IMG/VR virus record: IMGVR_UViG_3300033830_000020
Coordinates: 1 to 10,582 of that record
DNA: 10,582 nucleotides
Direction: 5' to 3' (one strand)
Part shown: one piece after another, positions 240-9,908 of the stretch
Layout of the letters: each line of letters starts with the position of its first letter
Numbering within the stretch: the first letter of the stretch is position 1
The notes under the pieces: generated by a model
Seen by the model: only the letters and a program-made list of their open reading frames with translations
Told to the model about the DNA's origin: nothing
The model's database searches: none
Translations under genes and position numbers: made by a program

Positions 240-263
240 GTTTTCACAATTGATATTGTACGT

Positions 264-283
264 TATGACAAATAAAAATATTT
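264..283 (-). promoter_or_regulatory. TATA+TGTCAT rudiviral promoter motif (AAATATTTTTATTTGTCATA on minus strand)
   Basis: 20-bp exact copy of 2673-2692. Lies about 25 nt upstream of ATG 239. GTC immediately downstream of the TATA box is a described feature of SIRV promoters. Confidence 0.75.
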
Positions 284-3556: not shown

Positions 3557-3856
3557 TTATTTACTTTGTTGTTGTTGTTGAGAGTTTTGGTTTTGTTCAG
3601 CTTTTTTCTGTGCTAATGCATTTACATCTCTTAATGTATCCATATTTAACAATGAATTAATTCCAAGAGTTGTAGTATCTTTAATACTTTCAACTGCTGA
3701 GATTGTAGATTTTGTCATTTGATCAATAGCTAATTGGAATGATTCATTTGTTTGTTTTTGATTGTAAAGATGTACAATTTCCCCAACTACATATGAACCT
3801 ATCAATACGCCCATTAGTACTAGAAATCCTTCTACTGCATATTGTATTGTTGACAT
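3557..3856 (-). CDS. pvap: Virus-associated pyramid protein (PVAP), SIRV2 P98 / STIV C92 family, virion egress
   Basis: N-terminal transmembrane helix followed by the family-typical GEIVHLYNQKQ...AIDQMTKST...IKDTT...LLNMDTLRDVN sequence. Confidence 0.92.
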   Translation of the reverse strand: MSTIQYAVEGFLVLMGVLIGSYVVGEIVHLYNQKQTNESFQLAIDQMTKSTISAVESIKDTTTLGINSLLNMDTLRDVNALAQKKAEQNQNSQQQQQSK

Positions 3857-3907
3857 TTCAATTCTGTTGTTTACAAATTACTTAATAATAAAGTTTGTGC
3901 AAAAATT

Positions 3908-3945
3908 CGAAATATATAAATTTGTCATAATGTATGTTTATAAAC
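3908..3945 (+). promoter_or_regulatory. Promoter of the svtR operon (BRE CGAAA, TATATAAA, TGTCAT) with GTTTATAAAC palindrome near the expected start site
   Basis: CGAAATATATAAATTTGTCAT at 3908-3928; perfect 10-bp palindrome at 3936-3945; RBS-like GAGGAG at 3947-3952. Confidence 0.65.
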
Positions 3946-4326: not shown

Positions 4327-4881
4327 TTAACTTTCATACATTGCTTTTACATTTTTTTCTTTTTGAGTTTCAAATTTTGGCAAAGTTACATTATTTTGTT
4401 TTTGATATTTTCCATGATATGGATTCTCAACAGGAGTCAAAGTTCTGGCAAAAATTAGATGTAAAAATCTTTGACCGCTTTGTAATTTTATTGGAAATTC
4501 CGAGCCTATTACTTCAATTGTAAGTTCTCCTTTGAATCCGGCATCTACAATAGTTGGCGGAATTGAAAGTCCTAATCTTGCGAAAGTTGATCTCAAATTC
4601 ACAAATGCCATTACATCATTTGGCAATTCTATATATTCCATAGTTGTCATCAAAAGATGTTCATGTGGATATATTATAATTTCGTTAGAGTTTATAATTT
4701 CATAAAAATCTTCTATTTTTTCTCCTGGTTCAAATATTCTTTGAGTTTTCTTCAATTTAGCAAATTGTGAGTCAATTCTCAAATCTATTCCATTTTCTCT
4801 TACTATTTCTTCCGAATATGGAACTATTTTTATCCATTCTTTTTCTAGATAGTATTTTAAATCACGGTCACTTAAGATCAT
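4327..4881 (-). CDS. dut: Trimeric dUTPase / dCTP deaminase-family enzyme
   Basis: MILSDRD start, [30 protein letters not shown] and PYHGKYQ motifs of the archaeal dCTP deaminase/dUTPase family; rudiviruses carry this gene near the capsid gene. Confidence 0.9.
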
Positions 4882-4899
4882 ATTTGTTCAAATCAAAAA

Positions 4900-4923
4900 G
4901 TCATGATATGACAAATATATTTT
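4900..4923 (-). promoter_or_regulatory. TATA+TGTCAT promoter of the dUTPase gene, with GTCAT-N3-ATGAC inverted repeat
   Basis: GTCATGATATGACAAATATATTTT on +; ATGAC at 4908-12 is about 27 nt upstream of ATG 4881. Confidence 0.65.
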
Positions 4924-4926
4924 TAT

Positions 4927-5181: not shown

Positions 5182-5499
5182 TTATTTTTCGTTTTCTGAC
5201 AAATATATATCATCATTTTTTCTGCCACAAATTATTGTCAAATCAAAGAAATTTTTTACATATCTATAATTTACTCTTATATATTGCGGATATCTAAAAG
5301 TTTTTGTAATATAACTTACAATTCCGTTCAATCTTTTTATATAAAAATTATGTGGTACTGTTAATCTTATTTTTACCATTAATTCGTTACCATTATCTAT
5401 AACATTATAATAGTAAATACTTGTCGAATAAAAAGCGTTTAACCAATTCAAGACTTGATCTTTAAACTTTCTACATTCATATAATACAAACTGTTCCAT
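5182..5499 (-). CDS. Hypothetical protein (about 105 aa, MEQFVLYEC...)
   Basis: ORF track gives a non-ATG start at 5523. The ATG at 5499 lies 19 nt downstream of the TATTTAATTGTCA motif (5518-5530) and is the more likely start. Confidence 0.7.
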   Translation of the reverse strand: MEQFVLYECRKFKDQVLNWLNAFYSTSIYYYNVIDNGNELMVKIRLTVPHNFYIKRLNGIVSYITKTFRYPQYIRVNYRYVKNFFDLTIICGRKNDDIYLSENEK

Positions 5500-5616
5500 A
5501 ATTTTAATATAAATGACTGACAATTAAATAGCTTTTTAAAAAATTGAAGATAGTATATTAGATAGTTAGTAATTCCCAGAATTATCCCAATTTTTCAACT
5601 TACATTATAATCAGCT

Positions 5617-5639
5617 CATATACAAAATATTATGTATAT
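5617..5639. repeat. 23-bp near-palindrome CATATACAAAATATTATGTATAT, copy 1 (upstream of the capsid gene)
   Basis: Identical to 9024-9046; dyad symmetry about a central AATATT. Confidence 0.8.
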
Positions 5640-5700
5640 AGCTTTTGTCTTGAATTTTACGCCAATTTCAACAATTATTATTCATCATATTACATATACG

Positions 5701-5747: not shown

Positions 5748-6152
5748 ATGGCGAAAGGTCACACACCAAGATCATTTTCGCAAAGATACGCAAAGTGGCA
5801 AGCTAAGTTCACTTCATTTAGTAATCCAACAGTTTCTTCAACAATTTTAACTAATGTATCTCCAGTTGCACAACAAAATTTCCAAACTAATGTACCTAAA
5901 TTCACTTCAGTAAATGAACAAGTTTCAGCGGTTTTAACTCAATATGGAATTACTGGGCCTCAAAGAGCAATTTATCAAGGTTTCGGATTAAAAATTGCTA
6001 GAGCTTTAAATAGAATTGGATCAGGCCCGGCTTTAGTAAATATGATAAACGGTTTAAAAGCTTATTACATAAATGCCTTTAATGCAAATCCTACAGTATT
6101 AGACGCTGTAACTAATATAATCACCGGTTCACCAACTGGATACGTGAGCTAA
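5748..6152 (+). CDS. mcp: Rudivirus major capsid protein (SIRV2 P134/gp26 family)
   Basis: 134 aa, MAKGHTPRSFSQRYAKWQAKF...NIITGSPTGYVS, nearly identical to the SIRV coat protein as I recall it. Confidence 0.97.
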   Translation: MAKGHTPRSFSQRYAKWQAKFTSFSNPTVSSTILTNVSPVAQQNFQTNVPKFTSVNEQVSAVLTQYGITGPQRAIYQGFGLKIARALNRIGSGPALVNMINGLKAYYINAFNANPTVLDAVTNIITGSPTGYVS

Positions 6153-6227: not shown

Positions 6228-6398
6228 TTAGTCATCATCTTCAACTTTTGTTTCAATATATTCGTAAGTTTTTTTACTAATCCTTTTACAATCGCTTAAT
6301 TTTAAATTTTTATTATGTCTTTTTATATGGTTAATCATGCTATTTCTGTTTCTGCTTATGAATCCGCAAACTGGACATTCGTATAAAAACATTCCCAT
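6228..6398 (-). CDS. Small C2H2 zinc-finger protein (about 56 aa), SIRV2 P55-like
   Basis: YECPVCGF...MINHIKRH finger. The ATG at 6416 in the track lies within the promoter motif, so ATG 6398 (or 6392) is preferred. Position between capsid and glycosyltransferase matches SIRV order. Confidence 0.8.
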   Translation of the reverse strand: MGMFLYECPVCGFISRNRNSMINHIKRHNKNLKLSDCKRISKKTYEYIETKVEDDD

Positions 6399-6402
6399 AT
6401 GA

Positions 6403-6432
6403 TTTTTTAGTGTCATGACAAATAAAAAAGTT
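6403..6432. promoter_or_regulatory. Overlapping divergent promoters centred on the perfect palindrome TGTCATGACA (6411-6420)
   Basis: Minus strand reads TTTTTTATTTGTCAT 18 nt before ATG 6398; plus strand reads TTTTTTAGTGTCAT about 20 nt before ATG 6435. Confidence 0.6.
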
Positions 6433-7946: not shown

Positions 7947-8144
7947 TCATTTTTTGTTTTCTGAATTTTTGCTTAATAAAACAGATATATCTTTGCTAAT
8001 TTCTTCAGATATATTTTTTATCATTTCTAAAGCTTCTAATATTTCATCTTCTTTAAGATCTTCATTTTCATTAATTTCATTAATTAATCCAAGTTGTAAT
8101 TCAAGTAAAACCTCAAATTTTATTAAATCTATCTTTTTTACCAT
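7947..8144 (-). CDS. 65-aa acidic helical protein, tandem paralog B
   Basis: Ungapped alignment to 8151-8348 with 26/65 identities (manual count). Confidence 0.8.
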   Translation of the reverse strand: MVKKIDLIKFEVLLELQLGLINEINENEDLKEDEILEALEMIKNISEEISKDISVLLSKNSENKK

Positions 8145-8150
8145 AGTTCA

Positions 8151-8348
8151 TCACTTTTTATTTTGTGAATTTTCTTTTACTATAAGTACTATTTCTTTAT
8201 CAATATCAGACATTATGCCTTTGGCACTCATTAGCAATTCTATTATATCTTCATCACTTAGAGCTTTATTATTTGCAATTTCTTCAATTATATCATAAAG
8301 CCATTTTGTCAATATTTTAATTTTTACTAAGTCTATATCTTTAACCAT
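8151..8348 (-). CDS. 65-aa helical protein, tandem paralog A
   Basis: Paralog of 7947-8144; TGTCAT promoter motif at 8376-8388, 28 nt upstream; GTGAG RBS-like element. Confidence 0.8.
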   Translation of the reverse strand: MVKDIDLVKIKILTKWLYDIIEEIANNKALSDEDIIELLMSAKGIMSDIDKEIVLIVKENSQNKK

Positions 8349-8385
8349 TTTCTCACGTAAATAGAAATTTAAAATATGACAAATA

Positions 8386-8613
8386 TCAAGTTTTACCTAG
8401 TCTTATTTTTATTTCTTCAATTTGTTTTTTTAATTCATTTTGATTTATCTTTAGTTCTTCAATTTCTGTTTTCAAATTTTGCAATTCTGAGTTTACAATT
8501 TCTTTTACTGCATCTTTTAGAGCTTGTTTTATTTTCAAATAAAGTTGAACAATTGCGAATAATGTAGTTAGAAATGTAGAAATTGTAGTCAGAATAAGAG
8601 TTATTTCACTCAT
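8386..8613 (-). CDS. Membrane-anchored coiled-coil protein (about 75 aa)
   Basis: N-terminal TM helix (ITLILTTISTFLTTLFAIVQLY) and heptad-rich C-terminus. GGTGA RBS at 8622-26 favours ATG 8613 over GTG 8625. Overlaps the stop of the 122-aa gene. Confidence 0.75.
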   Translation of the reverse strand: MSEITLILTTISTFLTTLFAIVQLYLKIKQALKDAVKEIVNSELQNLKTEIEELKINQNELKKQIEEIKIRLGKT

Positions 8614-8974: not shown

Positions 8975-9023
8975 AATTATTTATTTCACAAAACAAGAAT
9001 AAATAAACTCAAAGCCAATTTGC

Positions 9024-9047
9024 CATATACAAAATATTATGTATATG
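9024..9047. repeat. Near-perfect 24-bp palindrome CATATACAAAATATTATGTATATG, copy 2
   Basis: First 23 bp identical to 5617-5639; only one mismatched pair in the dyad. Confidence 0.8.
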
Positions 9048-9071
9048 AGTTTGTCTGTTTATGCGTAAAAA

Positions 9072-9098: not shown

Positions 9099-9140
9099 AG
9101 CGAAAGATTTATATATTTAGATTTCGAAATGTATAATGGG
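9099..9140 (+). promoter_or_regulatory. Strong BRE-TATA promoter, duplicated class (AGCGAAAGATTTATATATTT...TGGG), copy 1
   Basis: 34/42 ungapped identity to 9579-9620; the ATGs at 9148 and 9628 align at the same offset. Confidence 0.75.
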
Positions 9141-9147
9141 GTTAAAT

Positions 9148-9501
9148 ATGACAAATAAAAAAGTTCAAACCAAATCTCAAGTTAAATCTTATTTTTGTAA
9201 ATTATGCGATTTTATTGCAAATGATGAAAGTGAGTTAGAGTTTCATTACAAAATGGCACATGAAGAAGATAGTGATATTTCTGAAGAATTTCAAGTTGTC
9301 TATTTAAGGAAAAAAGAATATGAAGAATACATGAAAAATGAATATGAAAGAATTTGCAAAAGCGGAAGTTGTAAAATACGCCGTGAAATTAACATAGAAA
9401 ATGATAAAAGTGAAGTAAGAAGATTATACAAAGAATATTGCTCAACATGTGAATTGAAAAAATTTTTGGTTGACGAATTAAAGCAAAATGGAAAAATGTA
9501 A
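9148..9501 (+). CDS. Zinc-binding protein (about 117 aa): C2H2 finger plus a second Cys4-like site
   Basis: CKLC...HYKMAH finger; CKSGSC...CSTC. Start moved from 9136 to 9148 by alignment with the sister promoter; 9136 remains possible as a leaderless start. Confidence 0.78.
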   Translation: MTNKKVQTKSQVKSYFCKLCDFIANDESELEFHYKMAHEEDSDISEEFQVVYLRKKEYEEYMKNEYERICKSGSCKIRREINIENDKSEVRRLYKEYCSTCELKKFLVDELKQNGKM

Positions 9502-9578
9502 ATTTATTCTTTCTTTATTTTTTTATCTCTAATTTTTTTCATCTTTGTAATAATATTTCTAGTTTTTGATATAAATGA

Positions 9579-9620
9579 AGCGAAAGATTTTTATATTTCG
9601 ATTCCTAATATTATATTGGG
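9579..9620 (+). promoter_or_regulatory. Strong BRE-TATA promoter, duplicated class, copy 2
   Basis: AGCGAAAGATTTTTATATTTCGATT...TGGG; homologous to 9099-9140. Confidence 0.75.
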
Positions 9621-9627
9621 AAAAGAA

Positions 9628-9849
9628 ATGTCACTAAAAGAAGTTGAAGAAAAAGTTATTAAGTTAGCACATGAATTTGCTCAAAAATATGAAAAAGAAA
9701 TCTTAGAGTTAAATGAATATGAATTAATAGCATATATAAATTCAAAATTAGATTATGAATCTTGGAAATATTTTAATTTTTATCAACCAAAATTGTTAGC
9801 TTTATTTATAAAAACCGTGAAAGAAGACCTAGAATCTCAAAATAAATAA
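9628..9849 (+). CDS. Small acidic helical hypothetical protein (73 aa, MSLKEVEEKVIKLAHEFAQKY...)
   Basis: ATG 9628 preferred over TTG 9616; stand-alone unit with its own promoter and a T-rich terminator after 9849. Confidence 0.75.
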   Translation: MSLKEVEEKVIKLAHEFAQKYEKEILELNEYELIAYINSKLDYESWKYFNFYQPKLLALFIKTVKEDLESQNK

Positions 9850-9908
9850 CTTTTTTAAAATCTTCTTTTTTTATGTTCTATTTTTCTCATTTTTGTAACT
9901 TAAATTGT

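What the first reader, a model, noticed from the sequence alone, without database searches (positions are those of the whole stretch)
9099..9849. Two small genes with a shared 42-bp extended promoter: candidate early anti-defence genes
Seen: 9099-9140 and 9579-9620 are 34/42 identical without gaps (AGCGAAAGATTTWTATATTTMGATTYC...TATAWTGGG), and both ATGs lie 49 nt from the motif start. The downstream proteins (117-aa Zn-binding; 73-aa acidic, aromatic-rich) are unrelated, monocistronic, followed by T-rich terminators, and oppose the flanking minus-strand genes. Established: rudiviral anti-CRISPR and anti-defence genes tend to be small, early and preceded by a shared strong promoter. Inference: these are accessory cassettes expressed on entry and good candidates for new Acr or anti-defence proteins. 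I do not recognise either as AcrID1, AcrIIIB1 or AcrIII-1.
Basis: partly seen in the sequence, partly recalled or inferred. Interest (0 to 1): 0.65.

Follow-up and report, generated by a model that had tools for sequence, protein, structure and literature searches.

The report
Twin-promoter accessory gene cassettes in rudivirus
Two small dispensable genes of a Yellowstone Sulfolobus rod-shaped virus each carry their own copy of a strong promoter of the type that drives the known early anti-CRISPR genes; one of them is already a published low-probability anti-defence candidate, and neither has been tested.

Summary
9099-9140 and 9579-9620 are 34/42 identical, and this is the best 42-mer pair in the window (simulated windows reach 29-31). 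Each copy starts 49 nt before an ATG.

The window is a 10.6-kb fragment of a Usarudivirus, about 82% identical to SIRV4-11. Each repeat holds a purine-rich BRE (GCGAAAG), a TATA box (ATTTWTATA), a spacer of about 20 nt and a GGGG/GGTGA-like block about 10 nt before the ATG.

The BRE/TATA core and its distance to the ATG match the terminal early (acr/aca8) promoters of rudiviruses. The flanking blocks of that early consensus are missing, and the genes lie internally among core genes.

The two genes are dispensable cassettes at a hot spot. Relatives show A+B, B alone, A alone, a variant A, or neither. SIRV4 and SIRV11 keep a solo promoter remnant.

Gene A encodes a C2H2 zinc finger plus a family-specific four-cysteine helical domain. 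Its orthologues are listed by Bhoobalan-Chitty et al. 2024 as low-probability members of ADG.04. Gene B encodes a 73-aa helical protein with no recognisable fold and is not in that list.

Early timing and anti-defence activity could not be tested. The finding is an ordinary, partly published kind of candidate.

The parts
9099..9140 (+). Promoter and leader of gene A. BRE GCGAAAG at 9100-9106, TATA box ATTTATATA at 9107-9115, 10-bp palindrome ATTTCGAAAT at 9121-9130, GGGG (SD-like, probable start region of the mRNA) at 9138-9141. An in-frame alternative ATG lies at 9136.
   Evidence: Sequence. Conserved 46/49 against SIRV5 and SIRV7 while third codon positions of the gene are only 61-64% identical. 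Alignment of 15 related promoters. The assignment of BRE and TATA rests on established archaeal promoter architecture and on the description in PMC11065993. The transcription start is inferred, not mapped.
9148..9501 (+). Gene A, 117 aa. It has a Lys-rich N-terminal tail, a classical C2H2 zinc finger (C17, C20, H33, H38), an acidic linker, and a four-helix C-terminal domain with four invariant Cys (C70, C75, C98, C101).
   Evidence: phrog_18124, E = 2.9e-51; 17 homologues with all eight ligand residues invariant. AlphaFold2 pLDDT 69, beta-beta-alpha fold plus helices. dN/dS is 0.2-0.45. Orthologues are listed as ADG.04 in the low-probability sheet of PMC11065993.
9502..9567 (+). T-rich 3' region of gene A (T7 at 9518-9524, T7 at 9533-9539, T5 at 9563-9567), a probable oligo-T terminator.
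   Evidence: Termination of archaeal RNA polymerase at oligo-T tracts is established knowledge and was not tested here.
9579..9620 (+). Promoter and leader of gene B. BRE GCGAAAG at 9580-9586, TATA box ATTTTTATA at 9587-9595, proximal TTTCGATTCC, GGG at 9618-9620.
   Evidence: The first 20 nt are 18-19/20 conserved against SIRV5, SIRV7 and SIRV8.
9628..9849 (+). Gene B, 73 aa, all-helical, mildly acidic (pI 5.2), with 15% aromatic residues.
   Evidence: (phrog_21593, E = 2.2e-40). AlphaFold2 pLDDT 90, five helices; only 8 clusters at 50% identity among 1.84 billion representatives, all of about 73 aa. dN/dS is 0.06-0.46.
9850..9894 (+). T-rich 3' region of gene B (T6 at 9851-9856, T7 at 9866-9872, T5 at 9881-9885, T5 at 9890-9894), a probable terminator.

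Best explanation
The two 42-bp copies are paralogous core promoters with short leaders. Each drives an independent, monocistronic accessory gene cassette. The cassettes sit at a variable hot spot between the gp32-like minus-strand operon and the gp33-like gene of a Yellowstone Usarudivirus.

Shown:
- Each copy has a purine-rich BRE, a consensus TATA box, a spacer of about 20 nt, and a GGGG/GGTGA-like block about 10 nt before the ATG.
- The BRE/TATA core and its 44-51-nt distance to the ATG are those of the terminal early (acr/aca8) promoters. They differ from the TATA+GTCAT promoters of the neighbouring core genes.
- Both genes are real (purifying selection) and dispensable (repeated loss).
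- Promoter copies and coding regions have different histories among relatives.

Inferred:
- Host TBP and TFB load strongly on both promoters, so both genes are transcribed at a high level as separate short mRNAs that end at oligo-T tracts.
- The copies lack the blocks that flank the core in the terminal early regulon, which are the presumed Aca8 operator. They are therefore probably not under that regulon's shut-off, and their timing is open.
- The repeated promoter also serves as a homology patch through which cassettes are gained, lost and swapped.
- The products act on the host (counter-defence or takeover), not in replication or virion structure. A would be a zinc-finger adaptor with an exchangeable C-terminal domain, and B a small helical binder.

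My estimates: promoter-cassette anatomy about 0.9; strong expression about 0.6; anti-defence activity of at least one of the two about 0.35.
For: Repeat and promoter:
- The repeat is above chance.
- It is conserved at both orthologous genes.
- BRE+TATA is 17-20/20 identical between viruses, while third codon positions of A are 54-64% identical.
- The core GAAA[AG][AC]TTTA[TA]A[TA]A occurs outside the termini only at these two genes in five complete relatives. The distance to the ATG is like that of terminal genes.
- SIRV2 acrIIIB1 carries AGCGAAAGCTTTATATA.
- The other promoters in the window are of the TATA+GTCAT type.

Dispensability and cassette behaviour:
- SIRV4 and SIRV11 keep a solo promoter remnant fused to the DNA downstream of B.
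- SIRV10 has a different deletion junction.
- B is truncated in SIRV9.
- B stands alone in L013 and L015. In L015 it is driven by a promoter like window promoter A.
- L017 has an 84-aa protein with the same zinc finger but another C-terminus, and both of its promoters share lineage-specific changes.
- L019 has A without B, next to a homologue of a terminal early ADG.03-type gene.
- The locus is empty in SIRV2.

Gene properties:
- Gene A is 56-68% identical to its orthologues, against 87-92% for core proteins.
- dN/dS is below 1 for both genes.

Published precedent: ADG.04 in PMC11065993.
Against: - No expression data exist for this virus or its relatives, so strength and timing are inferred from sequence alone.
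- The flanks of the early regulon consensus are missing and the genes are internal. The authors of the screen rated such genes low-probability and unlikely to be immediate-early.
- The same strong core promoter also drives housekeeping host genes (PMC11065993 Discussion) and resembles the capsid-gene promoter in this window. It therefore signals strength, not function.
- Neither protein resembles any known Acr or anti-defence protein in sequence or fold.
- A C2H2 finger fits a DNA-binding regulator equally well (AFV1p06).
- Transcription starts and terminators are not mapped.
Confidence: 0.5

Rival explanations
1. Gene A is a sequence-specific DNA-binding transcription regulator that tunes viral or host promoters, as proposed for other archaeal-virus C2H2 proteins. 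Gene B would be an unrelated small regulator or cofactor. Neither would inhibit a defence system directly.
For: - Gene A has the classical CX2CX12HX4H pattern, a Lys-rich N-terminal tail and a predicted beta-beta-alpha fold.
- AFV1p06, a C2H2 protein of an archaeal virus, binds DNA.
- PMC11065993 notes that many predicted ADGs carry DNA-binding domains and may be regulators.
- The window encodes a second, core C2H2 protein at 6228-6416.
Against: - A regulator needed for the viral programme should not be lost in SIRV4, SIRV10, SIRV11, L013 and L015.
- The C-terminal domain is swapped in L017 while the finger is kept, which looks more like an adaptor with variable targets.
- No candidate operator specific to genomes that carry A was found.
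- The Pfam matches are all below their gathering scores.
Confidence: 0.2
2. The two genes are highly expressed middle or late accessory genes, for example assembly, egress or virion-associated factors. They would use a strong promoter like that of the capsid gene and have no role on entry.
For: - They lie in the central, structural and replication part of the genome.
- The capsid gene promoter in the window (GCGTGAAAATTTATATTG) is also of the BRE+TATA type without GTC.
- The pyramid-protein promoter shares TATATATTTCGA.
- The published screen rated such genes unlikely to be immediate-early.
Against: - They are dispensable and patchily distributed, even among viruses from one hot spring.
- Gene A evolves about three times faster at non-synonymous sites than the capsid protein.
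- The upstream palindrome shared with the capsid promoter belongs to the neighbouring minus-strand gene and predates the insertion.
Confidence: 0.12
3. The similarity is only what any two AT-rich archaeal promoters share by chance, with no common origin or common regulation.
For: The window is AT-rich. BRE and TATA elements are generic, and the repeat finder lists many low-identity AT-rich repeats.
Against: - It is the only 42-mer pair at 34/42 or better in the window, and simulations reach at most 31.
- The 20-nt head has 0.02 expected matches.
- The pairing is conserved in at least six relatives, with lineage-specific changes shared by both copies in L017.
Confidence: 0.02

Closest known systems
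Rudiviral early regulatory sequence and predicted anti-defence genes (Bhoobalan-Chitty et al. 2024, Nat Commun 15:3699, PMC11065993); cluster ADG.04
   Same: - The logic is the same: small single genes preceded by a purine-rich BRE plus a TTTAWATA box.
- The BRE/TATA core and its distance to the ATG are the same.
- Orthologues of gene A (SIRV5 gp29, SIRV6 gp28, SIRV7 gp27, SIRV8 gp35, SIRV9 gp33) are listed there as ADG.04.
- The N-terminal finger matches the high-confidence members SIRV3 gp06 and SMV3 gp47.
   Different: - They appear only in the low-probability sheet.
- They are internal, not terminal.
- The blocks flanking the core in the terminal consensus are absent.
- SIRV3 gp06 is a 48-aa finger alone, whereas gene A adds a family-specific four-cysteine helical domain.
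- Gene B was not found in that table under any of the six accessions or locus tags I tried.
Characterised archaeal anti-CRISPRs AcrID1, AcrIIIB1, AcrIIIB2, AcrIII-1 (DUF1874), AcrIA3
   Same: The genes are small, of rudiviral origin and monocistronic. The core promoter resembles that of acrIIIB1 and acrID1.
   Different: No sequence similarity was detected by Pfam, PHROGs or tblastn against phage records that include annotated Acr genes. No fold match was found. No activity is known.
AFV1p06, the C2H2 zinc-finger DNA-binding protein of Acidianus filamentous virus 1 (PDB 2LVH; PMC3541406)
   Same: It is a single eukaryote-like C2H2 finger in a small protein of a crenarchaeal virus, with disordered termini.
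   Different: No significant sequence match to any PDB chain, 2LVH included. Gene A keeps the fourth histidine and carries an extra 65-aa domain. DNA binding was not tested.
Canonical rudiviral TATA+GTC promoters (Kessler et al. 2004, as summarised in PMC5569661)
   Same: They are host TBP/TFB-dependent promoters in the same genome.
   Different: Promoters A and B lack the GTC triplet and have a strong purine BRE. Most other promoters in the window have TTTGTCAT and no such BRE. In V3 and L013, gene B is driven by a GTC-type promoter instead.

Membership tests
Early/ADG regulatory-sequence class of rudiviruses (PMC11065993) | Strong core promoter: purine-rich BRE directly upstream of a TTTAWATA-type TATA box | tested here: met
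   The copies read AGCGAAAG+ATTTATATA and AGCGAAAG+ATTTTTATA. The same core is found in terminal genes of SIRV5, SIRV7, SIRV8, SIRV9, V3, SIRV2 and SIRV3.
Early/ADG regulatory-sequence class of rudiviruses (PMC11065993) | Shares the virus-specific regulatory sequence around the promoter with other ADGs of the same genome (MEME/RSAT below 1e-8) | tested here: inconclusive
   The window lacks the termini, so the test was made on relatives. The copies match 26/48 and 25/48 consensus positions, mostly in the core, and the flanks TAAAAAGATAGA and AGTTTTTACATA are absent. MEME/RSAT statistics were not reproduced. The authors placed gene A's orthologues in the low-probability sheet.
Early/ADG regulatory-sequence class of rudiviruses (PMC11065993) | Single gene, not part of an operon | tested here: met
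   Each gene has its own promoter and T-tracts, and both flanks are on the opposite strand.
Early/ADG regulatory-sequence class of rudiviruses (PMC11065993) | Located near a genome terminus (the rule for rudiviruses) | tested here: not met
   Orthologues lie at 12.6-15.1 kb of 34-36-kb genomes, between core genes.
Early/ADG regulatory-sequence class of rudiviruses (PMC11065993) | Transcribed immediately after infection | not testable with these tools
   No RNA run holds the sequence, and no Usarudivirus transcriptome was found in the literature.
Anti-CRISPR / anti-defence protein | Inhibits a host defence system | not testable with these tools
   This requires infection or interference assays.
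Known archaeal Acr families (AcrID1, AcrIIIB1, AcrIII-1/DUF1874) | Detectable sequence or fold similarity | tested here: not met
   Pfam, PHROGs, tblastn, PDB sequence and fold searches gave no such match.
Classical C2H2 zinc finger (gene A, residues 15-38) | (F/Y)xCx2Cx3(F)x5Lx2Hx3-5H pattern with a beta-beta-alpha fold | tested here: met
   The sequence is YFCKLCDFIANDESELEFHYKMAH. C17, C20, H33 and H38 are invariant in 17 sequences. The model has E15-17, E22-24 and H27-37. Pfam hits are all C2H2 families but lie below their gathering scores (E = 0.003-0.11).
Classical C2H2 zinc finger (gene A) | Binds zinc and nucleic acid | not testable with these tools
The four C-terminal Cys could instead form disulfides, which are common in crenarchaeal viral proteins (own knowledge).
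ADG.04 cluster | Sequence similarity to SIRV3 gp06 and SMV3 gp47 | tested here: met
   tblastn gave E = 2e-4 for SIRV3 (residues 13-39) and 3e-6 for SMV3 (residues 2-52), so only the finger region matches.

The most novel reading that the evidence does not exclude
The duplicated strong promoter is a portable module. It lets a rudivirus shuffle small counter-defence cassettes between its termini and one internal hot spot by promoter-to-promoter recombination. Slot A would hold zinc-finger adaptors whose C-terminal domains are exchanged to hit different host targets. Gene B would be a new anti-defence fold expressed outside Aca8 control.
Probability: 0.2. Interest if true: 0.6.

Novelty: new member of a known kind. 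Interest (0 to 1): 0.35.

Why it matters
Few archaeal anti-defence proteins are characterised, and most rudiviral accessory genes have no known function. This locus offers two compact, dispensable genes that are probably highly expressed, in culturable relatives (SIRV5-9). One of them, gene B, is missing from the published candidate list.

The locus also gives a natural series of genomes with A+B, B only, A only, a variant A, or neither gene. These could be compared directly on defence-proficient hosts.

The mosaic pattern of the promoters suggests how such cassettes move. None of this changes current concepts. It extends a published prediction scheme.

Tried and rejected
- **Full 42-bp PWM.** Scanned over five complete Usarudivirus genomes, it hit nothing beyond the training sites at 12 bits or more. 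The motif as a whole is therefore not a regulon signal. Only the 14-17-nt core is shared.
- **Termini of this virus.** The record is only the 10.6-kb window, so its own termini cannot be scanned.
- **RNA evidence.** No RNA run holds the sequence. Read laying was not used, because DNA contigs cannot show timing.
- **Fold searches, gene B model (pLDDT 90).** There was no Foldseek hit at E <= 0.001 in PDB. In BFVD the only non-trivial hit was its own SIRV8 orthologue. VIA-align gave a best Z of 6.6, and ESM Atlas TM-scores stayed below 0.5.
- **eS17 rows for gene B.** The rows for ribosomal protein eS17 (Z 6.1-6.5) are below the noise level quoted for helical bundles, so I rejected them as evidence.
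- **Fold searches, gene A model (pLDDT 69).** Only the C2H2 finger is recognisable, and the C-terminal domain reached Z <= 4.
- **PDB profile searches.** Nothing significant for either protein.
- **ESM Atlas feature search.** No usable hit for B or for the C-terminal domain of A.
- **Word search with the C-terminal domain of A alone.** Only the same 117-aa family was found.
- **Rfam.** No RNA family in the window.
- **Upstream palindrome (9022-9049) as part of the cassette.** Rejected. It is present at the same junction in SIRV2 and SIRV4, which lack the cassette, so it belongs to the minus-strand gp32-like gene.
- **A and B as an obligate pair or toxin-antitoxin module.** Rejected, because each occurs without the other.
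- **Kessler et al. 2004 (PMC524901).** It could not be read. The GTC statement is cited through PMC5569661.

Full report
**Identity of the window**

The window is a whole IMG/VR record of 10,582 bases, estimated at 34% of a genome. It aligns over 66-94% of its length at about 82% identity with the Yellowstone Sulfolobus islandicus rod-shaped viruses SIRV4-11 and isolates V3, V60 and V65, genus Usarudivirus.

By synteny with SIRV7 it carries:
- the Cas4-like nuclease;
- the 435-aa ATPase;
- the pyramid protein;
- an RHH protein;
- a dUTPase;
- the major capsid protein (5748-6152);
- a glycosyltransferase;
- a string of small genes.

**The observation**

The pair is the only one in the window at that level, and 15 simulated windows reached at most 31/42. 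The 20-nt head has 0.02 expected matches.

Gene A (117 aa) and gene B (73 aa) are unrelated. Each is followed by T5-T7 runs, and both are flanked by minus-strand genes.

**What the repeat is**

Each copy begins with GCGAAAG followed by ATTTWTATA. This is the purine-rich BRE plus TATA box described for strong Sulfolobus promoters and for rudiviral early genes (PMC11065993). About 20 nt further on lies a G-rich block, roughly 10 nt before the ATG. It reads GGGG or GGG here, and GGTGA or GAGG in relatives.

From established promoter geometry (TATA centred about 26 nt before the start; my own knowledge), transcription should begin at or just before this block. That would give a leader of about 10 nt with a Shine-Dalgarno-like start. 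The start site is inferred, not mapped.

Most other promoters in the window are of the rudiviral TATA+GTCAT type without a purine BRE (GTC element as summarised in PMC5569661). Only A, B and the capsid gene have a BRE/TATA promoter without GTC.

**Relation to the early promoters**

I scanned five complete relatives.
- A PWM of the whole 42-mer finds only these two genes.
- The core GAAA[AG][AC]TTTA[TA]A[TA]A occurs at many terminal genes, and internally only at A and B. The distance from core to ATG is the same, 44-51 nt.

The terminal consensus is TAAAAAgaTAGAGAAAAnTTTAnATATnAGTTTnTACATA...TGgtGAnAAAAA-ATG. Promoters A and B match 26/48 and 25/48 of its defined positions, mostly in the core. 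They lack the upstream GATAGA block and the downstream AGTTTTTACATA block. SIRV2 acrIIIB1 has AGCGAAAGCTTTATATA.

However, these two genes do not carry the full regulatory sequence of the terminal early regulon, which the 2024 paper suggests is bound by Aca8. The same paper notes that this core promoter also drives constitutively expressed host genes. The core therefore argues for strength, not for timing.

**Constraint on the promoter**

The first 20 nt are 17-20/20 identical between the window and SIRV5, SIRV7, SIRV8 and V3. Third codon positions of gene A are only 54-64% identical.

Promoter and coding region also have different histories.

| Comparison | Promoter identity | Coding identity |
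|---|---|---|
| Window B vs SIRV8 B | 42/49 | 69% |
| Window B vs SIRV7 B | 37/49 | 88% |

An alignment of 15 promoters shows two proximal subtypes...TA(G/A)AT(T/A)TCGAAAT(G/A)TATAATGGGG and ...TTCGAWWWC.WATATTATATTGGG. These are distributed mosaically between the two gene slots and between genomes.

**A hot spot of dispensable cassettes**

| Genome or contig | Content of the locus |
|---|---|
| Window, SIRV5, SIRV6, SIRV7, SIRV8, V3, V60, V65 | A + B |
| SIRV9 | A + truncated B (45 aa) |
| SIRV4, SIRV11 | neither gene; remnant GCATGAGCGAAAAATTTTTATAAAT joined to the DNA that follows gene B elsewhere |
| SIRV10 | neither gene; a different deletion junction |
| SIRV2 | the two flanking genes are adjacent |
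| L013, L015/L016 (metagenomic) | B alone; in L015 behind a promoter like window promoter A |
| L017 (metagenomic) | 84-aa protein with the same finger but another C-terminus, plus B; both promoters share lineage-specific changes |
| L019 (metagenomic) | A without B, next to a wHTH gene 42% identical to the terminal SIRV7 ORF3 (ADG.03 family) |

The locus thus exchanges genes with the terminal pool. The repeated promoter is the obvious homology patch for this exchange, although that mechanism is an inference.

**The proteins**

Gene A belongs to phrog_18124. Seventeen homologues are all 117-121 aa. C17, C20, H33, H38 and C70, C75, C98, C101 are invariant, and the variable segments are mosaic.
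- AlphaFold2 (pLDDT 69) gives a disordered Lys-rich tail, a beta-beta-alpha finger, an acidic linker and four helices.
- Only the finger is recognisable.
- The C-terminal domain has no relatives outside the family and no fold match (Z <= 4).

Gene B belongs to phrog_21593.
- A profile search of 1.84 billion representatives found 8 clusters, all of about 73 aa.
- The model is confident (pLDDT 90, five helices) but matches nothing above noise.

Both genes are under purifying selection: dN/dS is 0.2-0.45 for A and 0.06-0.46 for B, against 0.07-0.10 for the capsid gene. Gene A is markedly more divergent than core proteins, at 56-68% against 87-92% identity.

**Comparison with what is published**

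Bhoobalan-Chitty et al. 2024 predicted anti-defence genes in archaeal viruses from exactly this kind of regulatory sequence. Their Supplementary Data 1 lists SIRV5 gp29, SIRV6 gp28, SIRV7 gp27, SIRV8 gp35 and SIRV9 gp33 as ADG.04, in the sheet "ADG_prediction(low-probability)". The Methods define that class as follows:
- the genes have an early-like BRE/TATA;
- they lie among core genes, or have the start site close to the start codon;

The high-confidence ADG.04 members are SIRV3 gp06, a 48-aa finger in the terminal acr cluster behind a full early promoter, and SMV3 gp47. Gene B's orthologues were not found in the table. No ADG.04 member has been tested experimentally, as far as the paper shows.

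**Verdict**

Points in favour of an anti-defence role:
- the core promoter;
- monocistronic organisation;
- dispensability;
- fast evolution of gene A;
- exchange with the terminal gene pool.

Points against, or neutral:
- the internal location;
- the absence of the regulon flanks;
- a DNA-binding-type domain in A;
- no similarity to any known inhibitor;
- no expression data.

I put the promoter-cassette anatomy at about 0.9 and an anti-defence function for at least one gene at about 0.35.

Noticed in passing
window 5615-5642 and 9022-9049: A 23-nt exact direct repeat, CATATACAAAATATTATGTATAT, is itself a near-perfect palindrome. One copy lies upstream of the capsid gene and the other upstream of the minus-strand 122-aa gene. 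Usarudivirus genomes carry 4-6 copies, and SIRV2 has syntenic copies before MCP gp26, at the gp32|gp33 junction, before gp39 and at gp42|gp43. This looks like a candidate operator of a regulon that includes structural genes. It fits the loose Sta1 consensus ATNT-N8-(A/T)NAT, and Sta1 footprints about 30 nt upstream of the SIRV1 capsid core promoter. This is a lead only.
   Followed up: partly
window 248-283, 2657-2692, 4890-4924, 8359-8394 and others: Most promoters in the window share TTT(A/T)TTTGTCATA, a TATA box plus the rudivirus-specific GTC element, about 25-30 nt before the start codon. They lack a purine BRE.
   Followed up: partly
window 9136-9138: An in-frame ATG lies 12 nt upstream of the conserved start of gene A, inside TATAATGGGG. 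It recurs in all promoters of this subtype (SIRV5 and SIRV7 A, V3 A, L017 slot A, L015 gene B) but not in SIRV8 A. It could be a leaderless alternative start.
   Followed up: partly
window 7947-8144 and 8151-8348 (minus strand): Two tandem 65-aa paralogues. The first is 93% identical to SIRV7 ORF24. The second matches the same SIRV7 region at only 37%. SIRV4 also has two copies.
   Followed up: no
window 6228-6416 (minus strand): A second small C2H2 zinc-finger protein of 62 aa lies next to the capsid gene. It is conserved in all relatives examined and in SIRV2 (gp27, ORF55, by position). It is only weakly similar to the finger of gene A.
   Followed up: partly
window 4327-4881 and 5182-5523: The gene content is mosaic. 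The dUTPase gene has no tblastn match in SIRV8, SIRV9 and V3. The 113-aa gene is 94% identical to V3 but only 47-48% identical to SIRV5, SIRV7, SIRV8 and SIRV9.
   Followed up: no
L019 324-548: A metagenomic rudivirus contig carries a 74-aa wHTH gene beside gene A at the same hot spot, behind a GTC-type promoter. The gene is 42% identical to SIRV7 ORF3 (ADG.03 family of PMC11065993). Gene B is absent.
   Followed up: partly
L005 35351-35404 (SIRV8 gp59 promoter; same in SIRV9 gp55): A terminal gene (SIRV9 gp55 is listed as ADG.21) has a promoter whose proximal part, TTTAAATATCTAAATATCGAAAGTATA, resembles the gene-A subtype rather than the terminal consensus.
   Followed up: no
window 3557-3856 promoter (about 3905-3930, minus strand): The pyramid-protein (P98) promoter shares TTTATATATTTCGA with promoters A and B but lacks their BRE. 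It sits 70 nt from its ATG.
   Followed up: no
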